Shown here piece by piece: positions 8,856 through 62,780 of a DNA stretch of 64,000 nt (position 1 is its first letter; the number at the start of each line of letters is the position of its first letter). The notes under the pieces were generated by a model, which made no database searches, had not been told where the DNA came from, and was given only the letters and a program-made list of their open reading frames with translations. Source of the DNA: Macrostomum lignano (lineage: Eukaryota); NCBI GenBank assembly GCA_002269645.1, contig NIVC01001184.1, positions 248,001-312,000 on the forward strand, in the 5' to 3' direction. Made by a program: the position numbers and the translations under genes.

Positions 8856-9381
8856 TGACTTTAGAAATATGGCCATAAAATATAACAGTTGGTCACCGAA
8901 AATACCGCACAGAAGTACAAAACAAGTTATGTTGCCTGCCGCTTGCTTGTGGAAGCAATTTCGAATGTAATGCAGCATTGAATTGAAAATGAATTCAGTG
9001 ATAGACAGCTCTTTGATCTGCACTCTTTGGACTTTGAACGAAGATTCACTCTTTGTGAGCACGACTGAGTACTCAGGTTGTCAAATCGCTCAATGCGCCA
9101 TCGTGAGCGACAGTAGTGCAGCAATGTCAGAGGGGTAAGCAATTGTTTCTTAGAAAGCTGCTGAATCGATTTCTTGACGACAGGCTTGCCAGTTTATTGA
9201 CGTTTACAGTCTGCAAGTGAATGCAAGGCACGCTGGTATTGATCACCATAGGTACCAGGCTGAAACATTTAACTGTCTACTTAGTTGCGAGTATCTATAG
9301 ACCATTGAAGCGCTGCAGATAATGCATTGTAGAGAAAGGACAAATGCAATTTCTGTCTCAACCTGCCTGTCTGTGTCTGTC

Positions 9382-30342: not shown

Positions 30343-30857
30343 ACAATGTGATATAAGAATTTGTAGGCCTTGCCTAGGCCTAGTCTTCTAATAACTATTA
30401 ATGACAGCATCAATATACAAACCAATCATTCACTATATTGACTTTGTCCCTAGTATATCCTTAGGTCTTCCCCTAGTTTTTCAGAATATACAATAAGATA
30501 TTATTTGGCCTTCTATATATGGCATACAATATAAAGTAAAAAATTGTTAGATGCATGATATTTTGCTTTGATATTATGCTTAGGATGTTGAACTTTGTGA
30601 CTTAGGAGCCAAAAGTATAGTAATTTAATATTAACATTCTTGTAAATATTAAATTAAAGCATTAAGCTTTCTTCAACTTCAATAGGTCTGAGGCTTAAGG
30701 GTAAAGTATAGATATTAGTACTTAATTTGATTGTCCATTGTTTATAGTTCCTTAGTGAGGTCCATATTTTTTTCATATAAATTCATGTTACTAAATGCAA
30801 TCCTCTGGTAAAAAAGTCAAATCTATCAAATTTTAATTTTGTTTGGCATCATTACAG

Positions 30858-31613
30858 GGCTGCAATTGCCACATTGACAGCCGTGTAGCCTGGCTCAATT
30901 GGCCAGAAGCTACCAATGTAGAATTCACAACCGCAGATGAGCTGGACTCAGCTGTTGACGATGCTGACTTGGTTGATGGAGTTCCAACTTTAAGATTTCT
31001 CTCTGCTGCAGCACTAACAGAGGACTCAAACTTTCTAAGAAATCGCTGTCTATCATTGAGTCCGCCTAGATCTGTTTGGCCTCAATTAGTTCGCAGTGCC
31101 ATTAAACAGGGTCACAGTCTCAGCTTGGTTCATCTGGCCACTGTATGGCCTTTTGATGAGTTCTCAGTACTAGATACTGCGCCACTGTCTTTCACCGCAA
31201 CAATTGACAGTCTTCAGAAGCCTAGTAGCTGTCGAAATCTTGCCCTGTCAGAAATCTGGTCATTAATCTGCCTGGCTGTGATCAATCGATGCCGAAATAA
31301 CTCGGCTTCATCCGCAACTGCACCAGCATCGATTCGCTATCATTTGCCTGGTCAGCCGCCGTCTGCGCAGCAGCAGTTTGCTTTCCTTGATCAGCTAGCA
31401 AGTTGCGGCGATGTTAGCAGATCTGTTCAAGTTGATCTTGACGTTGCTGTTGAAGGTCAAAATGAACTGTTGCGCCTAGCGTCTGTTGTATCGCGCTGTT
31501 ATCGGGGTCAGCTACGCTTGCGACGACTTTGTGTAGCATCGGTGCATCCAATGAAACTGTTGAGCGTTGTAAACGAACTTAAAATTGGTAGCTGGAGAAG
31601 TATTAATGAAGAG
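30858..31613 (+). CDS. Leucine-rich-repeat (RNI-like) protein, first detected exon (no ATG; opens at an acceptor)
   Basis: CATTACAG acceptor at 30857 phase 0; 252 open codons; donor GAG|GTGGGT at 31614. Confidence 0.7.
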
Positions 31614-32931: not shown

Positions 32932-33344
32932 CAGGGTCGGCAAACTTTTACCGCAAGGGCCAGATAGAGAATCTAGCGCATGACTGCGGGCCAGAGGATT
33001 GGAAGAGAGGAGAGAAAAGAGAGATAGGAGAAAGGAGATGAGATAATAAAGAAGGAGAGAGGAGACGAGATGAGGGATGAAATCGAAGAGGGGGAAAAGG
33101 GAAGAAGAGAGGAGGAAGGGAAGAGGAGAGGAGGGAGAGGAGAGGAGAAAGGGAAGAGGAGAGGAGGGAGAGGAGAGGAGAAAGGGAAGAGGAGAGGAGG
33201 GAGGGAAGAGATTAGGGAGATAAGAGAGAGAAGGGAGCTGAGAAGAGAGGCAAACCTTGAGCAGGCCAGATTGCTATTGTGAAGTTTCAAAGAACCCGAG
33301 AACCGGATAGAGAGGCTTCGCGGGCCATAGTTTGCCGACCCCTG
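32932..33344 (+). mobile_element. Complete hAT (Buster/Charlie-like) MITE with a polypurine core
   Basis: TIRs CAGGGTCGGCAAAC / GTTTGCCGACCCCTG; perfect 8-bp TSD TTGTAAAC. Confidence 0.88.
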
Positions 33345-35839: not shown

Positions 35840-36121
35840 ATGTCGGCCCAGTCGCCAGCCTCAATGTCGCTAATGGAACAGGAGCTGAATCAGGCTCAGA
35901 TTCGAGAGATTTTCACCTCGTTCAATCGATCGCATCAGCGCTGCTTCACCGATTGCGTTAACAAATTCGACAGGCGAAGCGTTAGCGATTCGGAGAAGAA
36001 TTGCGTAGCAAACTGCGTGGCCAAGTATATGAATACTACTCAGAGAATTTCTATGCGATTCCAGGAGCACCAGGCCATGATCACGGGCGGCGGGGCTGTT
36101 GCTCAAGGCCAGGGAAAATAG
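35840..36121 (+). CDS. TIMM9: Mitochondrial import small Tim chaperone Tim9, intronless, 93 aa
   Basis: Twin CX3C (RCFTDC, NCVANC) and the KYMNTTQRISMRFQE signature. Confidence 0.93.
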   Translation: MSAQSPASMSLMEQELNQAQIREIFTSFNRSHQRCFTDCVNKFDRRSVSDSEKNCVANCVAKYMNTTQRISMRFQEHQAMITGGGAVAQGQGK

Positions 36122-36439
36122 ACTGCTTTGCGAATGTTTTTATAGTCTGGTTGGCATTTTAAGCATCCTAGTAAAGTACATAATTTAATAATTGTCAACA
36201 ACTATTGTCTGTTTTGTCCGCAACAAAAAGTGCAATTTTGTCTTTCTTTCTTTCAGATTCAGATTCAGACTAGTAAAACAGTAGGATAGGATCACTGGAG
36301 GTTGGTTTTTTAGTTGCAAATAGATTTGCGAGATATGAAGTTTTCTGGGTTTTAGCACTGTATCGACAGAATACCATCTTCTGAATTTTTGAATTGCAAA
36401 TGAAACGAATTGATTAAGGAGTAAATTTTTAACAGGCCT

Positions 36440-37009
36440 TAGCAATCCATGGCTCCGGGCCAGATGAGAGAGGAAAGGAGAGGGAACAAAGAGAGAAAAG
36501 AGAAGATAAAAGATGACAAGATAAAATTTTTGCACTTACTTTCATATACGGCAATCTTTTTAGCGGTTGTGAAGTTTCGCGGTTGTGAAAGTAGGTGATT
36601 TAGCGGTTGTGAAGTTTCGCGGTTGTGAAAGTAGGTGATTTAGCGGTTGTGAAGTTTCGCGGTTGTGAAAGTAGGTGATTTAGCGGTTGTGAAGTTTCGC
36701 GGTTGTGAAAGTAGGTGATTTAGCGGTTGTGAAATTTCGCGTTTGTGAAAGCAATCCGTCTTGCTCAAGGACACAAATTGTTCTTATTAGCATCGGGAAT
36801 AGAACCCCGTACCTTCAAGTCGTGCGTCCGACGCTCTGACCACTAGGCTATTGTAAAAACCCCTTTAGAAGATTGAAAGAGTTGAAAGGAGAGAGGAGGT
36901 AAGACAGCTGAAAAGAGACCTTGAGCGGGCCGGATCGCCATTGTGAGTTTCAAAGGACCCCAAGACCGGATAGAAGCTTCGCGAGCCGGAGTTTGCCGAC
37001 CAACTCCTG
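36440..37009 (+). mobile_element. Degenerate copy of the polypurine-core hAT MITE, interrupted by a SINE
   Basis: Shares CCTTGAGCGGGCCGGAT...GTTTGCCGACC 3' part and GGGCCAGA 5' part with 32932-33344. Confidence 0.65.
36535..36850 (-). mobile_element. tRNA-derived SINE with an internal 40-bp tandem repeat (36561-36750)
   Basis: A box TAGCCTAGTGG (36850-36840), B box GGTTCTATTCC (36806-36796) at tRNA spacing, then GTGTCCTTGAGCAAGAC resembling a CORE-type SINE body. Confidence 0.7.
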
Positions 37010-37346
37010 GACTAGAAAAGGCACACTTGAGCACAAGCACAACAAAAATTTCCATCAGAACGTCTTTTGCCTGATTGCTCGCCTCCATGGCTAGAAAAGA
37101 ATAGTTTGATTAACTTGCGAAAGACACTTTGGTATTTTGCTCCATATAAAATTCGGAACCTCAGAAGGTGAAGTTTTGTCTGTATTTTGTGGCGATAACC
37201 AGCCTCCAGTGAAATTTGAGTGCAGAGTCCTGCTTTGATTATCCATGGTCAAAAGTCAGTTGCGTATCTGAGATGAAATTTCATCGACAGCTCCAAAAGT
37301 GGAAAAAAAGTCCAACTTTTAAATATTTGTAATATAAATTCTTCAG

Positions 37347-38522
37347 GAAAGCCAACCGTCTGCTGTAACAGTGGCAGCAACAGCGCCACAGTGCGTCGCA
37401 GCTGAAGCTTCACATTCATCTGAGAGCCAAGTTGAAGTTAACACACTAGTTGAACTAACAGATTGCAATCTTAACTTAGAAGCAAGCCAGGGTCGAAGTC
37501 AGCAAGCTAATAAACAACGATTTAAACAAGCGCGAGCGCCTCCGCCTGCAAAACAACAAGCTGAGGCATGCCAGTCATTGAATTTCCGTAATCCAGTAAC
37601 CGCACGTTATCCAAACACGGATCAGTTGTGGCACAGAGTTGGAGAATTATCCCTATTCGATTGGTCAGTGTCCGGCAACGAGACTTGCATAGTAGTTCGC
37701 GGTCGAGGCTTCTGCATCGCTCTAGACGTTGGCGTCTGCCCGCCGCAGGCTGTGGACGCCGATCACGTGTTTATTAGTCACGGTCACGTTGATCATTGCG
37801 GCGCATTGCACATGCATATTAGAAAGCGTCAGTTGCTTAGACTGCCACCGGCTGTCTACTACATGCCCGAATGTCTAATAAATCCAATGCAATCTACATT
37901 GGCTGCATTTGTTACCATGCAAGGTGACAGCGACTATGCGGAAATGGTGTCCAACTCTAGACTTGTCGGTTTGAAAGTTGGCGATCGAGTTCCAATTAGT
38001 AATGACAATAATCAGCCTGCCGATGCAGCCAGTCTGACCTTGAGCGTATTCGCTACTGATCATCGGGTGCCCAGTTTGGGCTGCATATTGCGCCGTAGAC
38101 ACATCGTTTTGCTGCCTGAATGTCGTCGACTGAGCCAGGATGAGCTGCGAGCACGGGTTGCTCAGGGCCTGCCAGTGCGCGGTCCCGAGTGGGAGCCGTT
38201 GCTAGGCTACACTGGAGACACCAGATTCAATGTATTCTTAACGCCGCAAGATCCGGACTTGTTGCGCGTTAGATTGCTCATTTCCGAGTTGACATTTTTG
38301 AGTGGTTCGATTGAACGCGCAGATAGTTTTGGACATTGTCACGTTGATCAATTTGCGCAGCATTGGAGACTGTTTGGCGCTGTGAATCGGCTTGTGTTTG
38401 TGCACTTTAGCAATAAGGTTTTGCCGGAAGAGATTCTTGAGCGGGTGTACTCAACTTTGCCTCAACAGCTGGGTCGCAGAGTCTACTGCGGACTGATTGC
38501 CAAGAGATTGCTGTATTCATGA
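37347..38522 (+). CDS. tRNase Z short form, TM/plant type (metallo-beta-lactamase fold), copy A; intronless, opens at a splice acceptor
   Basis: WSVSGxETC, ALDVGVCP, SHGHVDH, TDHRVPS, YTGDT, SELT, GHCH and VHFS; TTCTTCAG acceptor at 37346 phase 0 with in-frame TAA at 37335. Confidence 0.88.
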   Translation, partial: ESQPSAVTVAATAPQCVAAEASHSSESQVEVNTLVELTDCNLNLEASQGRSQQANKQRFKQARAPPPAKQQAEACQSLNFRNPVTARYPNTDQLWHRVGELSLFDWSVSGNETCIVVRGRGFCIALDVGVCPPQAVDADHVFISHGHVDHCGALHMHIRKRQLLRLPPAVYYMPECLINPMQSTLAAFVTMQGDSDYAEMVSNSRLVGLKVGDRVPISNDNNQPADAASLTLSVFATDHRVPSLGCILRRRHIVLLPECRRLSQDELRARVAQGLPVRGPEWEPLLGYTGDTRFNVFLTPQDPDLLRVRLLISELTFLSGSIERADSFGHCHVDQFAQHWRLFGAVNRLVFVHFSNKVLPEEILERVYSTLPQQLGRRVYCGLIAKRLLYS

Positions 38523-38821: not shown

Positions 38822-38994
38822 ACATGCTTGGGCGCAACCTAGGGATTCGCCCGGCCGTTTCTATTGGCAAAACACACATGTAAGTCGCTATTGGACGGAA
38901 TAGTAGTCACGTGACTGCTCTCAGCCAATAGCGACTTACATGTGTGTGTGTTGCCAATAGAAACGGCCGAGTGATTCCCAAGGTTGCGCATGTA
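38822..38994. mobile_element. ~170-bp palindromic MITE, copy 3 (inverted relative to copy 2)
   Basis: Near-identical to the reverse complement of 32128-32299. Confidence 0.8.
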
Positions 38995-39889: not shown

Positions 39890-40501
39890 TATGGTGGGAA
39901 TAATTAATACTATTTATTAACTTAAAATATGAAAGGAAATGTCCCAAATTTTGAGGATTTTCGACCACAGAGACATTTCGTGGACCGAGCAGTCCATCAC
40001 GTTTCGTTATCTATGCCAGGCTAATTTTGCTCAGTCTGGTTTGGATTTAATTAATTGCTGTATGGACTGCTTGGGGTTGGTTGCCTTTTAACTGAAAAAT
40101 TTATGGTTGTATATGAGTGTGTTCTTAGACGAATAAGACGAAGACGAATAATAAAACAATGCCATGCATTTCAGCGTATTGGCTCTTGTATTTCTTTTGT
40201 TTTTGTTTACGTATTTTAGTTCTTACTAGGTATTTTACTTGTAGTAAAAAATCTTTTGTGTATAGTACTGACTCAGTAGCTAGTGTGGTTCGCTTAATAT
40301 AAAAACTCCCTTAGAATAACAAAATAGCTTCTACCTAGGAATTCCGTGTGACAGTGACAGTAGCTCAAAAAGATATTCTTAGAGATATTTTTGAATCCTG
40401 AATTTCGCACAGCAATTCTGATGCTTAGAAAAACCAGTAGCTCAAAAAGACACTCACGCTACATATCGGCTGGTTTCCCATGATTTTTGTCCCTATTCCA
40501 G

Positions 40502-41374
40502 TGTCTGTCAGTGCCCGATCCCCTCCTGCCCCTGCCGGCATGGATGGCTGGCCTGTTTGCCCTGCTAATCGCTGTTGGCTTTGTGCTCAGCCTGTACCTG
40601 TGGGAGCTCGGCTCGGCCAATGCTCGAGCTGGGGTTGATCGCGACAATCCTAAAGTGATTATTCGCAGGTTTCTCGGCGTCTCAGCGGTTAGTTTAAGCG
40701 TGCTGATCTGCTATAGGTACTTTCTGATGAAGCCGACAGCTGCCAGCTGGTCAGATGTGCTTCAGCTGATCGGTCTGAGATGGTCCGGAATGCTGCCAGC
40801 TGTTGGAGCATCCTTGTTGCTAACCGCTATCCTGTTCACTGGCCCGATTCTGCTAGCCTGGGAGACTGGCGACGGATTCTTTGATAGGGAACCGCTGCTG
40901 AGTTTGAGATGCTGCCGCACTTTAGTGTTGGCTCCGGTCACTGAAGAGCTGTGCTTTCGCGCCCTGATGCTGCCGGTGCTGTGCGTTCATCTCTCTTGCA
41001 CTCGGGCGGCCTTCCTGTCGCCGCTGTTCTTCGGCTTGGCGCATTTTCATCATTTGATTAACCGGCTACAGCGCGGCTATCCGCTTGTGCCCAGCCTGAT
41101 TCAGGCAACGTTTCAATTCTCCTACACTTACATATTCGGCGTGTATTCGGCCTACTTGTATTTGAGAACTGGCCAGTTAGCTGCCGCCTGCGCCGCGCAT
41201 TCCTTCTGCAATCTGATGGGTTTCCCAGATTTTGAGGCGCTGGCCAATCTGCGAGGAATTAAACTGGCGGTGCACGGCGGCGCCTTTGTTTTGGGATTGG
41301 TTGGTTGGCTGGCCCTGCTGGGGCGGCTGACCGAACCAGCGATGTTTGCTTCGCAGTGCGACTGCTTCTGGTAG
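40502..41374 (+). CDS. RCE1: CAAX prenyl protease 2 (Rce1), intronless
   Basis: RDNPKVIIRRF, APVTEELCFR, FFGLAHFHH, FSYTYIFG and HSFCNLMGFP motifs; acceptor TTCCAG at 40501 phase 0; start uncertain (internal Met ~15 codons in). Confidence 0.93.
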   Translation, partial: CLSVPDPLLPLPAWMAGLFALLIAVGFVLSLYLWELGSANARAGVDRDNPKVIIRRFLGVSAVSLSVLICYRYFLMKPTAASWSDVLQLIGLRWSGMLPAVGASLLLTAILFTGPILLAWETGDGFFDREPLLSLRCCRTLVLAPVTEELCFRALMLPVLCVHLSCTRAAFLSPLFFGLAHFHHLINRLQRGYPLVPSLIQATFQFSYTYIFGVYSAYLYLRTGQLAAACAAHSFCNLMGFPDFEALANLRGIKLAVHGGAFVLGLVGWLALLGRLTEPAMFASQCDCFW

Positions 41375-43727: not shown

Positions 43728-44756
43728 ATGTCCCATAATGACGAAGGTGCAGAGACCGCCAAAGCGGCCAGTTGGGTCGAGTTTTTCGCCGACCAACCGC
43801 AGAACAAGATGCGAGTGTTCGACTGGTCAGTGTCCGGCTTTGAGACTTGCATAGTAGTCCACGGTCCCAGCTTCCGTCTGGCGCTGGACATTGGCGCCTG
43901 TCCGCCGCAGGCAATCAGCGCCGATCACGTGTTCATTAGTCACGGTCACGTGGACCATTGCGGAGCACTGCACCAGCACATGCGCCGGCGTCAACTGGTA
44001 GGCCTACCACCAGCTACGTACTACGTGCCGGAGCATCTGGTCCAGCCGCTGATTGACATTGCTCGGCTATTCAGCGTCGTACATGGCGACGAAGACGAGG
44101 ACAACGAAGGAGGTTCTGCGAAACTGTCGACGAAAGATAAAAAATCCAAGAAAGAGGATGCCACTGTCGCAGACGGTGCCTCAGCCGAAGCTGGGAGTGA
44201 CGAAATAAGAATCTACGGCAAAATTGTAGCCGCTAGTCCGGGTGACGATTTGCAACTGTCAAAGAATCTTCGCATCCGTCCGTTCGCCACAGATCATCGA
44301 GTACCCAGCATTGGCTGTCTGGTGTACTGCAAGCGCAGCCAGTTGCTACCCAAATATGCCGGCCTGCCGGGTGCGGAACTTGCCGAACTGGCTCGCAACG
44401 GGGAACAGTTACGAGAGGCTCGGTGGGAACCCGCTATCGGCTACACAGGGGATACCAGATTCACTGTTCTAGCGTGTCCTCCCGAGCCCGACCTGCTCAA
44501 GGTTAGACTGTTAGTCTGCGAGCTAACCTACGTTGAAGGGCCGACAGATACAGCTGAGAAATACGGTCATTGTCATTTGCACGATTTCTCGTCGCGTGCA
44601 AATCTGTTTGACAATGTTGGCCAGCTGTTGTTTGTGCACTTCAGTAGGCGGCACTCGCCTAACCAAGTGATTAACGCTGTGCTGACTTCGCTGCCAGAGG
44701 AGCTACGGTCTAAAGTCTACTGCGGACTCAATGCTCTGCGGTTCTATCGTTCCTGA
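43728..44756 (+). CDS. tRNase Z short form, TM/plant type, copy B, 342 aa, intronless
   Basis: Own ATG; WSVSGFETC, LDIGACP, SHGHVDH, TDHRVPS, short arm KRSQLLPKYAGLPGAELAEL, YTGDT, CELT, YGHCH and VHFS. Confidence 0.9.
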   Translation: MSHNDEGAETAKAASWVEFFADQPQNKMRVFDWSVSGFETCIVVHGPSFRLALDIGACPPQAISADHVFISHGHVDHCGALHQHMRRRQLVGLPPATYYVPEHLVQPLIDIARLFSVVHGDEDEDNEGGSAKLSTKDKKSKKEDATVADGASAEAGSDEIRIYGKIVAASPGDDLQLSKNLRIRPFATDHRVPSIGCLVYCKRSQLLPKYAGLPGAELAELARNGEQLREARWEPAIGYTGDTRFTVLACPPEPDLLKVRLLVCELTYVEGPTDTAEKYGHCHLHDFSSRANLFDNVGQLLFVHFSRRHSPNQVINAVLTSLPEELRSKVYCGLNALRFYRS

Positions 44757-50824: not shown

Positions 50825-52038
50825 GCATTACTGCGGGCCAGAGGAGGGGAGAAAGGAGATAGAGGAATAAGAGGAGAGGAGATGAAAGATAAAATAGGAG
50901 AGAAGGAAAGGGAGAGCTGATGGAGAAGATGAGAGAGAGTAGAGAAGAGAGAGGAGTGGAGAGGAGAGAAGGGAAGGGAGAGGAGAGAAGGGAAGGGAGA
51001 GGAGAGGAGGGAAGGGAGAGAAGAGGAGGGTAGGGAAGGGAGAGGAGAGAAGGGAAGGGAGAGGAGAGGAGGGAAGGGAGGGAAGGGAGAGGAGAGGAGA
51101 GAGGGAAGGGAGAGGAGAGGAGAGAAGGGAAGGGAGAGGAGAGGAGAGAAGGGAAGGGAGAGGAGAGGAGGGAAGGGAGAGGAGAGGAGAGGAGAGGAGA
51201 GAAGGGAAGGGAGAGGAGGGAAGGGAGAGGAGAGGAGAGAAGGGAAGGGAGAGGAGAGGAGAGAAGGGAAGGGAGAGGAGAGGAGGGAAGGGAGAGGAGA
51301 GGAGAGGAGAGGAGGGAAGGTAATGGAGAGGAGAGGAGAGAAGGGAATGGAGAGGAGAGGAGAGAAGGGAAGGGAGAGGAGAGGAGAGAAGGGAAGGGAG
51401 AGGAGAGGAGGGAAGGGAGAGGAGAGGAGAGGAGAGAAGGGAATGGAGAGGAGAGGAGAGAAGGGAAGGGAGAGGAGAGGAGAGAAGGGAGAGGAGAGGA
51501 GGGAAGGGAGAGGAGAGAAGGGAATGGAGAGTAGAGGAGAGAAGGGAAGGGAGAGGAGAGGAGAGAAGGGAAGGGAGAGGAGAGGAGAGGAGGGAAGCGA
51601 GAGAAGAGGAGGGAAGGTAATGGAGAGGAGAGGAGAGAAGAGGAGAGGAGAGAAGGGAGAGGAGAGGAGGGAAGGGAGAGGAGAGAAGGGAATGGAGAGG
51701 AGAGGAGAGAAGGGAAGGGAGAGGAGAGGAGGGAAGGTAATGGAGAGGAGAGGAGGGAAGGGAGAGGAGAGGAGAGGAGGGAAGGGAGAGGAGAGAAGGG
51801 AATGGAGAGGAGAGAAGGGAAGGAAGAGGAGAGGAGGGAAGGAAGAGGAGAGGAGAGAAGGGAAGGGAGAGAAAAGGAGAGGAGAGGAGGAGTGGAGAGA
51901 AGGGAAGGGGAGACGAAAGGAGACTAGAGAAGGGAGCTAGAAGAGACGTTCACCTTGAGCGGGCCGGATTGCTATTGTGAATTTTAAAATTAAAACCCGG
52001 ATACAGAGGCTCTGCGGGCCGAAGTTTGCGGACCCCTG
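50825..52038 (+). mobile_element. Polypurine-core hAT MITE copy with the core expanded to ~1.1 kb; 5' TIR lost
   Basis: ACTGCGGGCCAGAGG 5' part, GGAGA/GGGAA repeats, CCTTGAGCGGGCCGGATTGCTATTGTG and 3' TIR GTTTGCGGACCCCTG. Confidence 0.75.
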
Positions 52039-62435: not shown

Positions 62436-62780
62436 TAGAACCTAGCGCATGACTACGGCTAGAGGAGTGAAGAGGAGAGGGGAAAGAGAAGAGAGAAGGT
62501 AGATAGAAGAAAGGAGAGGCGAGGGAATAGAGTACAAGAGGGGAGACGAGAGGAGAGGAGAGAGGAGAAGAGAAGAGAGGAAAGAGGAGAGAGGAGAGAA
62601 GAGGAAGGGAGAAAAGAGAGAGGAGAAAGGAGAGGAGAGAGAAGAGGAGAGATAAGACAAGAGGAGATAAATGAGAAGAGAGAGGACATTAGAGAGAAGA
62701 GAGCTGAGAAGAGAGACAAACCTTGAGCAGGCTGGATTGCTATTGTGAAGTTTCAAAGGACCCGATACAGTAGGCCCGCA
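62436..62780 (+). mobile_element. Polypurine-core hAT MITE copy lacking both TIRs, in a GABBR1 intron
   Basis: TAGCGCATGACT 5' part and AAACCTTGAGCAGGCTGGATTGCTATTGTGAAGTTTCAAAG 3' part match 32932-33344. Confidence 0.72.

What the first reader, a model, noticed from the sequence alone, without database searches (positions are those of the whole stretch)
37330..37820. tRNase Z copy A has no genomic start codon: candidate initiation on the spliced-leader AUG
Seen: the frame is closed by TAA at 37335-37337, a TTCTTCAG acceptor ends at 37346, and the 391-codon frame starts exactly in phase 0 after it. The first in-frame ATG (37812) lies after the HxHxDH metal-binding motif, so it cannot yield an active enzyme. 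I found no upstream ATG-bearing exon with a convincing phase-0 donor. Known: flatworm spliced leaders end in AUG, which can act as the initiator Met. Inference: translation of this gene requires SL trans-splicing, so trans-splicing would act as its on-switch.
Basis: partly seen in the sequence, partly recalled or inferred. Interest (0 to 1): 0.85.

Follow-up and report, generated by a model that had tools for sequence, protein, structure and literature searches.

The report
Flatworm RNase Z gene started by spliced leader
A Macrostomum lignano tRNase Z gene really has no usable start codon of its own and most likely borrows the AUG at the end of the spliced leader, a start mechanism already documented in flatworms, so this is an ordinary new example, not a new kind of switch.

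Summary
The window is Macrostomum lignano (Mlig_3_7, NIVC01001184.1). A TAA (37335-37337) closes the frame, TTCTTCAG ends at 37346, and 391 codons follow in phase. The first in-frame ATG (37812, residue 156) lies after HGHVDH.

Initiation on the spliced-leader (SL) AUG is the best explanation, about 0.75, but the support is indirect:
- The M. lignano SL ends in ATG. Joined at 37347 it gives one 392-codon ORF.
- GenBank annotates this gene as a single-exon, 5'-partial CDS. It is gene 3 of a multi-gene transcriptional unit (Tim10 – tRNase Z – Rce1).
- A 5'-partial call puts the transcript's 5' end between the TAA and 37356, within 10 nt of the acceptor.
- The ATG-less 99-codon extension is open (P about 0.01) and has coding-like 3-base periodicity.
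- The catalytic core is intact and no more diverged from outgroups than copy B.
- No upstream ATG exon with a good phase-0 donor exists in 5.3 kb.

I could not obtain any SL-junction read.

The "on-switch" idea is not supported. An internal gene of such a unit needs trans-splicing anyway, and two neighbouring genes show the same in-phase acceptor pattern. SL-AUG initiation is established in Schistosoma and Echinococcus. This is a new member of a known kind, of low to moderate interest.

The parts
35840..36121 (+). Upstream gene of the same transcriptional unit (g2): 93-aa Tim10/DDP-family mitochondrial import protein with its own ATG
   Evidence: PF02953; locus tags Mlig025095g2 and Mlig021034g2.
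36122..37346 (+). Intercistronic region (outron), 1225 nt. It contains a 40-nt tandem repeat (36559-36751), a dispersed repeat (36901-37001) and a tRNA-like fragment
   Evidence: It holds no ATG exon with a good phase-0 donor. Its two GTRAG sites (36899, 36943) lie at the edge of or inside the dispersed repeat and have no in-phase ATG.
37335..37337 (+). In-frame TAA that closes the reading frame three codons before the acceptor
37339..37346 (+). Predicted SL trans-splice acceptor TTCTTCAG; the last six bases match YTNCAG
   Evidence: motif from PMC8629364. Identical in all three genome copies.
37347..38522 (+). tRNase Z copy A: single exon of 391 codons plus TGA. With the SL attached, the ORF is 392 codons starting at the SL AUG
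   Evidence: GenBank PAA72034.1 and PAA88017.1 are annotated 'partial'.
37347..37643 (+). ATG-less N-terminal extension of 99 codons, lineage-specific and predicted disordered
   Evidence: Open frame P = 0.006-0.012. Periodicity chi-square 29.7, GC1/2/3 = 0.64/0.49/0.30. Residues 1-90 have pLDDT below 50. No homologue covers it.
37617..37619 (+). In-frame ACG in the context AACACGG, a possible near-cognate start or relic of an ancestral ATG
   Evidence: It lies within one codon of where cestode orthologues have their Met. Its use as a start is inference only.
37779..37796 (+). HGHVDH (HxHxDH) metal-binding motif II, residues 145-150
   Evidence: invariant H145, H147, D149 and H150.
37812..37814 (+). 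First genomic in-frame ATG (residue 156). Starting here would delete the first beta-strands and motif II
40494..41374 (+). Next gene of the unit (g4, Rce1 / CAAX prenyl protease 2). Acceptor TATTCCAG ends at 40501 and is in phase 0. The CDS is annotated 5'-partial from 40505; the first genomic ATG is at 40544
30850..30870 (+). 5' end of g1 of the unit. Acceptor CATTACAG ends at 30857 and is in phase 0. The annotated 5'-partial CDS starts 9, 12 or 24 nt after it in the three genome copies
43728..44756 (+). tRNase Z copy B, 342 aa, with its own ATG 31 codons before the conserved core

Best explanation
Copy A is a functional short-form RNase Z gene (TRZ1 / RNase ZS1 type). It sits as the third gene in a polycistronic transcriptional unit of Macrostomum lignano: g1 – Tim10 – tRNase Z A – Rce1.

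Proposed mechanism:
- The pre-mRNA is cut at the acceptor TTCTTCAG|G (37346|37347).
- The 35-nt spliced leader CGGTCTCTTACTGCGAAGACTCAATTTATTGCATG is joined there.
- Its 3'-terminal AUG, 32 nt from the cap and followed by G at +4, becomes the first AUG of the mRNA and is in frame.
- Translation from it gives M-ESQPSAV..., 392 residues: a roughly 90-residue disordered extension followed by the complete metallo-beta-lactamase core.

What is shown: the sequence anatomy, the species and its SL, the 5'-partial annotation within a multi-gene unit, the intact and constrained enzyme core, and the coding-like statistics of the extension.

What is inferred: that SL addition happens at exactly this site, and that the ribosome initiates on the SL AUG.

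Trans-splicing here is obligatory processing, not a demonstrated regulatory switch.
For: 1. Species and SL. Proteins identical to the window's are GenBank M. lignano entries, and the window lies in NIVC01001184.1. The M. lignano SL is a single 35-nt sequence ending in ATG (PMC8629364). Macrostomum workers already call that ATG a translation start codon (PMC10468722).

2. Frame. SL plus exon gives a 392-codon ORF from the SL AUG. The only other ATG before 37812 is 37568, which is off frame and opens a 7-codon ORF.

3. Annotation.
- All three genome copies carry a single-exon, 5'-partial CDS beginning 9-12 nt after the acceptor.
- A 5'-partial call requires the transcript's 5' end to lie between the TAA at 37335 and 37356.
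- Locus tags show Tim10 = g2, this gene = g3 and Rce1 = g4 of one transcriptional unit.
- The .gN genes are the pieces of a unit cut by SL and poly(A) signals (PMC5730564).

4. Acceptor. It matches YTNCAG and is the only such site in the relevant 700 nt.

5. The extension looks translated. The open frame has P = 0.006-0.012. The 3-base periodicity gives chi-square 29.7, reached by 0 of 150 open-frame shuffles and by 4.5% of background windows.

6. The enzyme must be translated from upstream of about 37640.
- All 24 invariant columns, including the catalytic residues of motifs II-V and of the HEAT and HST motifs, are kept.
- Copy A is 43% identical to cestode orthologues and copy B 41%.
- The best PDB match is rice RNase ZS1, 7xgt, E = 3.5e-31.
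- The AF2 fold starts at about residue 91.

7. No cis-spliced alternative was found.

8. Neighbours g1 and g4 show the same pattern. All three 5'-partial genes are in phase 0 with their acceptor, which has a chance of (1/3)^3, about 0.04.

9. Precedent. More than 40 S. mansoni cDNAs need the SL AUG (Cheng et al. 2006, as cited in PMC9851317). In E. granulosus, 143 of 187 SL-bearing clusters are full length only when read from the SL ATG (PMC3510090).
Against: - No SL-junction read, cDNA or peptide for this gene could be obtained.
- The annotated CDS starts 9-12 nt after the acceptor, not at it. The annotation therefore places the 5' end near the junction but does not pinpoint it. The same raggedness at g1 (+9, +12, +24) suggests coverage-based ends.
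- The codon usage of the extension scores like non-coding sequence: LLR -0.06 per codon against +0.21 for the cores, and GC3 0.30 against 0.51-0.58.
- The SL AUG has T at -3, a weak context.
- The 465 nt before 37812 are depleted in ATG in all frames, 1 against 6.2 expected, P = 0.004. That would also fit a leader selected for scanning to a downstream start.
- Use of the SL AUG has not been shown experimentally in Macrostomum.
Confidence: 0.75

Rival explanations
1. Near-cognate initiation. The mRNA, trans-spliced or not, is translated mainly from a non-AUG codon inside the exon. The most plausible is ACG 37617 in the optimal context AACACGG; GTG 37371 is another. ACG 37617 would give a protein of about 301 aa, close to the length of orthologues, and the upstream 270 nt would be an AUG-poor leader.
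For: - ACG 37617 has A at -3 and G at +4, and lies within one codon of the Met of the cestode orthologues.
- ATG is depleted across the leader.
- The codon usage of the extension resembles non-coding DNA.
- The extension has no homologues and is predicted disordered.
Against: - This reading does not explain why the frame stays open for 99 codons back to exactly the acceptor (P about 0.01), or why the stretch has strong codon-position periodicity.
- If the SL is added, an in-frame cap-proximal AUG precedes the ACG and would capture most scanning ribosomes.
- Near-cognate starts are usually inefficient (general knowledge).
Confidence: 0.08
2. Missed cis-spliced first exon. An ATG-bearing exon upstream, within or beyond the 1.2-kb repeat-rich spacer, is cis-spliced to the 37346 acceptor, and the public annotation failed to assemble it.
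For: - The acceptor could serve cis-splicing as well as trans-splicing.
- The spacer contains repeats that hamper read mapping.
- One weak candidate exists: ATG 36449 to GTT|GTGAAG at 36568, phase 0.
Against: - No ATG segment in 5.3 kb ends in phase 0 on a GT[A/G]AG donor.
- The only two consensus donors in the spacer (36899, 36943) lie at the edge of or inside a dispersed repeat. Their open frames reach back only 10 and 6 codons, without an ATG.
- The candidate donor sits inside a tandem repeat whose copy number differs between genome copies.
- The RNA-seq-guided annotation gives a single exon in all three copies.
- Another gene (Tim10) occupies the strand immediately upstream.
Confidence: 0.07
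3. Copy A is a non-functional or decaying duplicate. Either it is not translated, or it is translated only from ATG 37812 into a truncated, inactive protein, and copy B supplies the activity.
For: - A paralogue with its own ATG lies 5 kb downstream.
- Differences among the three genome copies of A are mostly nonsynonymous: 4 nonsynonymous against 2 synonymous sites. These numbers are tiny.
- The Pfam Lactamase_B_2 score is just under its cut-off, 25.2 against 27 bits.
Against: - The 391-codon frame is intact in three copies.
- All catalytic and invariant residues are conserved.
- A is no more diverged from cestode, snail and oomycete orthologues than B is.
- The region upstream of 37812 is conserved at protein level with B, so it has been under selection as coding sequence.
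- The gene was retained in an expression-filtered transcriptome annotation.
Confidence: 0.05

Closest known systems
[quoted passage not shown]
   Same: - The SL ends in AUG.
- The acceptor lies in phase 0 with an ORF that has no in-frame stop after it.
- There is no genomic AUG upstream of the conserved or essential part of the protein.

For comparison, more than 40 S. mansoni cDNAs need the SL AUG. In E. granulosus, 143 of 187 SL-bearing clusters are predicted full length when read from the SL ATG, and 4 of the 8 in-frame examples tabulated would require it to match orthologue N-termini.
   Different: - The host is a free-living, early-branching rhabditophoran (Macrostomorpha), where use of the SL AUG has been assumed but not demonstrated gene by gene.
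- The SL AUG here does more than replace a Met a few codons away. It would add about 90 residues of lineage-specific, disordered sequence.
- The junction itself has not been observed for this gene.
Downstream genes of SL-resolved operons in M. lignano (Wudarski et al. 2017; Ustyantsev & Berezikov 2021)
   Same: - The gene is on the same strand as its neighbours and is annotated as gene 3 of one transcriptional unit.
- It has a YTNCAG acceptor.
- A repeat-rich spacer separates it from the upstream gene.
   Different: The raw spacer from the Tim10 stop is 1225 nt. It falls under the authors' 1-kb repeat-adjusted operon threshold only after subtracting the roughly 290 nt of repeats I could identify. 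I could not reproduce their repeat masking.
Short-form tRNase Z / RNase Z of the plant TRZ1 / rice RNase ZS1 type (PDB 7xgt); 'nuclear ribonuclease Z' in database names
   Same: - It has a metallo-beta-lactamase core with HxHxDH and the later conserved His, Asp and Glu positions all present.
- E = 3.5e-31 to RNase ZS1 over residues 107-380.
- The AF2 model of the core is confident.
   Different: - It carries a 90-100-residue N-terminal extension that cestode, oomycete and bacterial relatives lack. A snail homologue has an unrelated extension of similar length.
- The substrate, tRNA 3' trailers or other RNAs, is untested.
slORFs: ORFs created by SL addition in nematodes, trypanosomes and Oikopleura (slORFfinder, PMC9851317)
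   Same: The start codon is supplied by the leader, not by the gene.
   Different: Those cases mostly involve near-cognate NUG codons within the SL and were defined by ribosome footprints. Here the codon is a canonical AUG at the very 3' end of the SL, and no footprint data exist.

Membership tests
SL-AUG-initiated trans-spliced flatworm mRNA | The organism's spliced leader ends in AUG | tested here: met
   The window is M. lignano. Its SL is CGGTCTCTTACTGCGAAGACTCAATTTATTGCATG (PMC8629364). No SL RNA gene lies in the window itself.
SL-AUG-initiated trans-spliced flatworm mRNA | The mature mRNA carries the SL joined at the proposed acceptor | not testable with these tools
   No transcript data for this gene were reachable. 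Indirect support comes from the 5'-partial single-exon CDS starting 9-12 nt after the acceptor, in a gene cut out of a multi-gene transcriptional unit.
SL-AUG-initiated trans-spliced flatworm mRNA | The SL AUG is in frame with the main ORF, with no stop between | tested here: met
   SL plus exon gives a 392-codon ORF from the SL AUG.
SL-AUG-initiated trans-spliced flatworm mRNA | No genomic in-frame AUG can give a protein with the conserved N-terminal part | tested here: met
   The first in-frame ATG is residue 156. It lies after motif II and after beta-strands E96-E142 of the fold.
SL-AUG-initiated trans-spliced flatworm mRNA | Ribosomes actually initiate on the SL AUG (protein N-terminus or footprints) | not testable with these tools
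   This needs ribosome profiling, proteomics or a reporter. Supporting statistics only: the open frame and the periodicity of the extension.
SL-resolved operon (polycistronic transcriptional unit) of M. lignano | The gene and its same-strand neighbours are annotated as genes of one transcriptional unit | tested here: met
   Mlig025095 g2 (Tim10), g3 (this gene) and g4 (Rce1); Mlig021034 g2 and g3. The naming convention is confirmed by PMC5730564 Supplementary Fig. 5.
SL-resolved operon (polycistronic transcriptional unit) of M. lignano | Repeat-adjusted intergenic distance below 1 kb (criterion of PMC8629364) | tested here: inconclusive
   There are 1225 nt from the Tim10 stop to the acceptor. 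Subtracting the 193-nt tandem repeat and the 101-nt dispersed repeat leaves about 930 nt, before allowing for the 3'UTR. The authors' repeat annotation was not available.
SL-resolved operon (polycistronic transcriptional unit) of M. lignano | [quoted passage not shown] | tested here: met
   CTTCAG ends at 37346.
Short-form RNase Z (tRNase Z, TRZ1 / RNase ZS1 / ELAC1 type) | Metallo-beta-lactamase fold with HxHxDH and the downstream catalytic His and Asp motifs | tested here: met
   Invariant H145, H147, D149, H150, H239, D291, E314, H330 and H353. The AF2 core has pLDDT mostly above 90.
Short-form RNase Z (tRNase Z, TRZ1 / RNase ZS1 / ELAC1 type) | Significant sequence similarity to a characterised RNase Z | tested here: met
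   7xgt RNase ZS1, E = 3.5e-31, residues 107-380. Homologues are named ribonuclease Z by NCBI, UniRef and JGI.
Short-form RNase Z (tRNase Z, TRZ1 / RNase ZS1 / ELAC1 type) | Passes a curated family model threshold | tested here: not met
   Pfam Lactamase_B_2 scores 25.2 bits against a cut-off of 27, and Lactamase_B scores 19.5 against 22.7. These are superfamily models, not RNase Z-specific ones. PF23023, which several homologues hit, was not reported for copy A.
Short-form RNase Z (tRNase Z, TRZ1 / RNase ZS1 / ELAC1 type) | Endonucleolytic removal of tRNA 3' trailers | not testable with these tools
   This needs an enzyme assay.

The most novel reading that the evidence does not exclude
After the tRNase Z duplication, copy A lost its own start codon. 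One possibility is ATG to ACG at 37617, which keeps an optimal Kozak context at the position where cestode orthologues start. The gene was then rescued by the in-frame SL AUG. That rescue would have turned about 90 codons of former 5'UTR into a new, still codon-unadapted, disordered N-terminal extension.

Trans-splicing would then be a route to de novo coding sequence. It would also produce a paralogue pair in which one copy is autonomous and the other is strictly SL-dependent.
Probability: 0.3. Interest if true: 0.45.

Novelty: new member of a known kind. Interest (0 to 1): 0.27.

Why it matters
If confirmed, this is a clean example, in a free-living and transgenesis-capable flatworm, of a conserved enzyme gene that cannot be translated without the start codon donated by the spliced leader.

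Its practical value is mainly for annotation. In the Mlig_3_7 GenBank records such genes appear as "partial" proteins because the leader, with its ATG, was trimmed before ORF calling. Three of the four genes of this one transcriptional unit show the pattern, so many "partial" M. lignano proteins are probably complete once an M is added.

The paralogue pair also offers a convenient test system. Copy A is ATG-less and copy B has an ATG. Together they could show how efficiently the SL AUG is used, and whether 5'UTR sequence can be recruited into coding sequence.

It does not reveal a new mechanism.

Tried and rejected
**Direct transcript evidence.** None of these attempts gave anything:
- A full-text search for the locus tags found no paper.
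- The supplements of Wudarski 2017 and Grudniewska 2018 hold no entry for them.
- The junction sequence TTGCATG+GAAAGCCAACCGTC has no match in metagenome contigs.
- An exact look-up of the M-prefixed 392-aa protein in the assembly collection found nothing.
- The 90% cluster of the protein has only the three GenBank members, so no RNA-seq-derived ORF is held.

**Conservation of the acceptor and extension.** The three genome copies are nearly identical upstream and downstream, so they carry no information. No other Macrostomum species is in the searchable collections.

**Codon-usage log-likelihood.** The training set was small, about 1000 codons. The extension scored like non-coding DNA. I report this as evidence against the main explanation and do not discard it. 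Periodicity was then tested separately and is strong.

**Search for an SL RNA gene, tRNAs or Rfam families in the window.** None were found.

**Homology search with the long open frame after the g1 acceptor.** There were no hits, not even the annotated 549-aa protein. That ORF is therefore mostly intronic, and I make no claim about g1's first Met.

**Homology between A's extension and B's 5' region.** None was detected. Similarity begins at 37656.

**Rejected explanations:**
- Sequencing or assembly error: three contigs agree.
- A mitochondrial presequence role for the extension: by eye its first 50 residues are acidic.
- A tiny intron that would bring the off-frame ATG 37568 into frame: there are no plausible splice sites.
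Full report
**1. What the window is**

A protein search with the 391-codon frame returned a 100%-identical 388-aa protein encoded by the window. It also returned M. lignano paralogues and flatworm, snail and oomycete proteins named ribonuclease Z. The identical cluster holds GenBank PAA72034.1 (BOX15_Mlig021034g3, partial) and PAA88017.1 (BOX15_Mlig025095g3, partial). The window maps to NIVC01001184.1 of assembly GCA_002269645.1, Mlig_3_7. Window position equals L001 position plus 27355. Two further near-identical copies of the locus exist in the assembly, L002 and L003. This fits the known chromosome duplication of the DV1 line (PMC8629364).

**2. The observation**

The sequence reads taatataaattcttcag|gaaagccaaccg. 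TAA is at 37335-37337 and the AG ends at 37346. Translation from 37347 gives 391 sense codons and a TGA at 38520-38522. In-frame ATGs occur only from 37812 onward. HGHVDH is residues 145-150 and the first Met is residue 156. Copy B (43728-44756) has its own ATG 31 codons before the conserved core.

**3. Is copy A a real, constrained enzyme gene?**

- Aligned with copy B, two cestode, one snail, one oomycete and two prokaryote-type homologues, copy A keeps all 24 invariant columns. These include H145, H147, D149, H150, H239, D291, E314, H330 and H353.
- Its identity to outgroups equals that of copy B: 43.0 against 41.0% to a cestode, 35.0 against 35.6% to Biomphalaria, and 36.8 against 37.1% to Phytophthora. 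It is not decaying.
- The best solved relative is rice RNase ZS1 (7xgt), E = 3.5e-31 over residues 107-380.
- An AlphaFold2 model (mean pLDDT 78.8) has a confident core from about residue 91, and pLDDT below 50 for residues 1-90.

Translation must therefore start upstream of about 37620-37640. A start at Met156 would remove four beta-strands and motif II.

**4. What could supply the start?**

(a) *A cis-spliced ATG exon.* I listed every ATG-started, stop-free segment in the 5.3 kb upstream that ends in phase 0 on a GT.
- None ends on GT[A/G]AG, the M. lignano donor consensus of PMC8629364.
- The best is ATG 36449 to GTT|GTGAAG at 36568, inside a 40-nt tandem repeat whose copy number differs between genome copies.
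- The only two consensus donors in the spacer (36899, 36943) lie at the edge of or inside a dispersed repeat. Their open frames reach back only 10 and 6 codons, without an ATG.

(b) *A near-cognate codon.* In-frame candidates are GTG 37371, TTG 37578, ACG 37617 and TTG 37626. ACG 37617 sits in AACACGG.

(c) *The spliced leader.*
- M. lignano has one 35-nt SL, CGGTCTCTTACTGCGAAGACTCAATTTATTGCATG. Its trans-splice acceptors are enriched for [T/C]TNCAG (PMC8629364).
- The site at 37346 matches that motif and is the only match between 37210 and 37900.
- Joining the SL at 37347 puts its AUG in frame, giving a 392-codon ORF. The only other ATG in the first 465 nt of the exon is off frame and opens a 7-codon ORF.

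**5. Indirect transcript evidence from the public annotation**

The Mlig_3_7 annotation was built from RNA-seq. Transcriptional units were assembled and then cut into genes by the TBONE pipeline at sites of SL-read and poly(A)-read signal. ORFs were called with TransDecoder on sequences from which the SL had been trimmed (PMC5730564). Supplementary Fig. 5 of that paper shows that names of the form MligNNNNNN.g1 and .g2 denote successive genes of one unit.

An exact look-up of the neighbours gave Tim10 = Mlig025095g2 / Mlig021034g2, this gene = g3, and Rce1 = Mlig025095g4, partial. Copy A is thus an internal gene of a unit with at least four genes.

Its CDS is single-exon and 5'-partial in all three copies. 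It starts at 37356 in the window's copy (L001) and at the equivalent position in L003, and at the equivalent of 37359 in L002. A 5'-partial call is possible only if the transcript contains no in-frame stop upstream. The annotated 5' end must therefore lie between 37338 and 37356, within 10 nt of the acceptor.

The 9-12-nt offset is a wrinkle. The same raggedness appears at g1, where the three copies start 9, 12 and 24 nt after one and the same acceptor, CATTACAG at 30857. My inference is that these ends are coverage-based. Reads containing SL bases cannot map end to end, so they do not mark exact junctions.

**6. Is the extension translated?**

- Frame 0 of 37347-37643 has no stop, while frames 1 and 2 have 6 and 11.
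- Only 0.6% of mononucleotide shuffles and 1.2% of dinucleotide shuffles keep frame 0 open.
- Base composition by codon position is strongly periodic: GC1/2/3 = 0.64/0.49/0.30, chi-square 29.7. No shuffle among 150 open-frame shuffles reached this value, and 4.5% of 593 background windows did.
- Against this, a codon-usage log-likelihood trained on four local CDSs scores the extension like intergenic DNA, and GC3 is far below that of the cores.

I read the extension as translated but young or weakly constrained. It has no homologues and is predicted disordered.

**7. Context: the pattern is routine here**

Rce1 (g4) has the acceptor TATTCCAG ending at 40501. The acceptor is in phase 0, an in-frame TGA lies six codons upstream, and the 5'-partial CDS starts at 40505. 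The SL AUG would add about 15 residues before its first genomic Met at 40544. g1 is likewise 5'-partial and in phase with its acceptor.

All three non-ATG genes of the unit are in phase 0. If the SL AUG were irrelevant, the chance of this would be (1/3)^3, about 0.04.

The likely cause of the "partial" labels is that the SL, with its ATG, was trimmed before ORF calling. Later Macrostomum annotators deliberately kept the ATG for this reason (PMC10468722).

**8. Comparison with what is known**

- All reported flatworm SLs end in AUG (PMC12582326).
- Cheng et al. 2006 showed that the SL AUG is in frame in 28% of S. mansoni trans-spliced transcripts, and that more than 40 cDNAs require it (as summarised in PMC9851317).
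- In E. granulosus, 143 of 187 SL-bearing clusters are full length only from the SL ATG. Use of the SL AUG is conserved across Neodermata for some orthologues (PMC3510090).
- H. microstoma authors describe the ATG as providing the necessary start codon (PMC7653826).

The mechanism is therefore established. This gene would be a new instance in a free-living macrostomid.

**9. The "on-switch" claim**

Nothing in the sequence or the literature indicates regulated trans-splicing at this site. As an internal gene of a polycistronic unit, the mRNA needs the SL for its cap whether or not it also needs the AUG. I regard this part of the interpretation as unsupported.

**10. Rivals and residual doubts**

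- Near-cognate initiation at ACG 37617 is the most interesting rival. The codon has an optimal context and lies within one codon of the cestode Met. The exon's first 465 nt are also ATG-poor, 1 against 6.2 expected, P = 0.004. This rival does not explain the open, periodic frame reaching back exactly to the acceptor. An in-frame SL AUG would also pre-empt it.
- A missed cis exon and a decaying duplicate are each unlikely, for the reasons in sections 3 and 4.
- No direct junction evidence could be obtained. I therefore put the main explanation at about 0.75.

**11. Verdict**

In novelty it is a new member of a known kind, and interest is low to moderate. The most novel reading still open is loss of the start codon after duplication, followed by rescue by the SL AUG and recruitment of former 5'UTR as coding sequence. 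I give that a probability of about 0.3.

Noticed in passing
window 40494-41374 (also L002 12510-13379, L003 12914-13783): Rce1 / CAAX prenyl protease 2 is g4 of the same unit and is also annotated 5'-partial. Its acceptor TATTCCAG ends at 40501 in phase 0, and an in-frame TGA lies at 40481. The SL AUG would give MCLSVPDPLLPLPAW ahead of the first genomic Met at 40544.
   Followed up: partly
window 30834-30870 (L001 3512, L002 2506, L003 696): g1 of the unit, a 544-549-aa protein with a faint LRR hit, is 5'-partial in all three genome copies. Its annotated starts are ragged, 9, 12 or 24 nt after one in-phase acceptor (CATTACAG, ends 30857), and a TAA lies seven codons upstream. The long open frame after the acceptor found no homologues, not even the annotated g1 protein, so the first exon is probably short.
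   Followed up: partly
window 37347-37811: ATG trinucleotides are depleted in all frames: 1 observed against 6.2 expected from dinucleotide shuffles, P = 0.004. The SL-AUG model does not require this. It would fit selection for scanning or leaky scanning through this stretch.
   Followed up: no
window 37617-37619: An in-frame ACG sits in the optimal context AACACGG, within one codon of the position where cestode orthologues have their initiator Met. It may be a relic of an ancestral ATG or a secondary near-cognate start.
   Followed up: partly
window 37656-37696 vs 43818-43858: An island of 37/41 identical nucleotides (TTCGAYTGGTCAGTGTCCGGC...GAGACTTGCATAGTAGT) links copies A and B, which are otherwise only about 47% identical at protein level. 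It may reflect a gene-conversion tract or a nucleotide-level constraint.
   Followed up: no
window 36559-36751; L003 about 8900-9330: A 40-nt tandem repeat (TTTAGCGGTTGTGAAGTTTCGCGGTTGTGAAAGTAGGTGA) lies in the spacer upstream of copy A. One of the three genome copies carries about 400 nt more of it.
   Followed up: partly
window 36786-36866, minus strand: A tRNA-like sequence with D-arm-like TAGTGGTCAGAGC and T-arm-like GGTTCTATTCCC. ARAGORN and Rfam do not call it, and its fold is no more stable than shuffles. It is probably a tRNA-derived SINE or pseudogene fragment.
   Followed up: partly
window 36901-37001, also 33236-33340, 51952-52034, 62697-62763: A dispersed repeat of about 100 nt, 75-80% identical between copies. 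The two consensus splice-donor-like sites of the spacer lie at its edge (36899) or inside it (36943).
   Followed up: no
window 38832-38989: A nested inverted repeat lies 300 nt downstream of copy A's stop codon: 47-nt arms 89% complementary, with inner 23-nt arms 100% complementary. It looks like a MITE or hairpin element.
   Followed up: no
window 43728-44756 and 44988 onward; proteins P0003, P0004, P0010: UniRef models from the older M. lignano assembly fuse copy B to the downstream HMA / Sod_Cu-domain gene, which looks like a copper chaperone for SOD and starts 232 nt after B's stop. This looks like read-through mis-annotation of another polycistronic pair.
   Followed up: no
window 40502-41374 and 43728-44756 (L001 13147 onward and 16373 onward): Rce1 and tRNase Z copy B are intact ORFs in the window's contig but are not among its called genes. 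The equivalent genes are annotated on the two sister contigs.
   Followed up: no
window 37347-37643: The N-terminal extension has GC3 = 0.30, against 0.51-0.58 in the cores of copies A and B, and non-coding-like codon usage despite strong 3-base periodicity. This suggests evolutionarily young coding sequence.
   Followed up: partly
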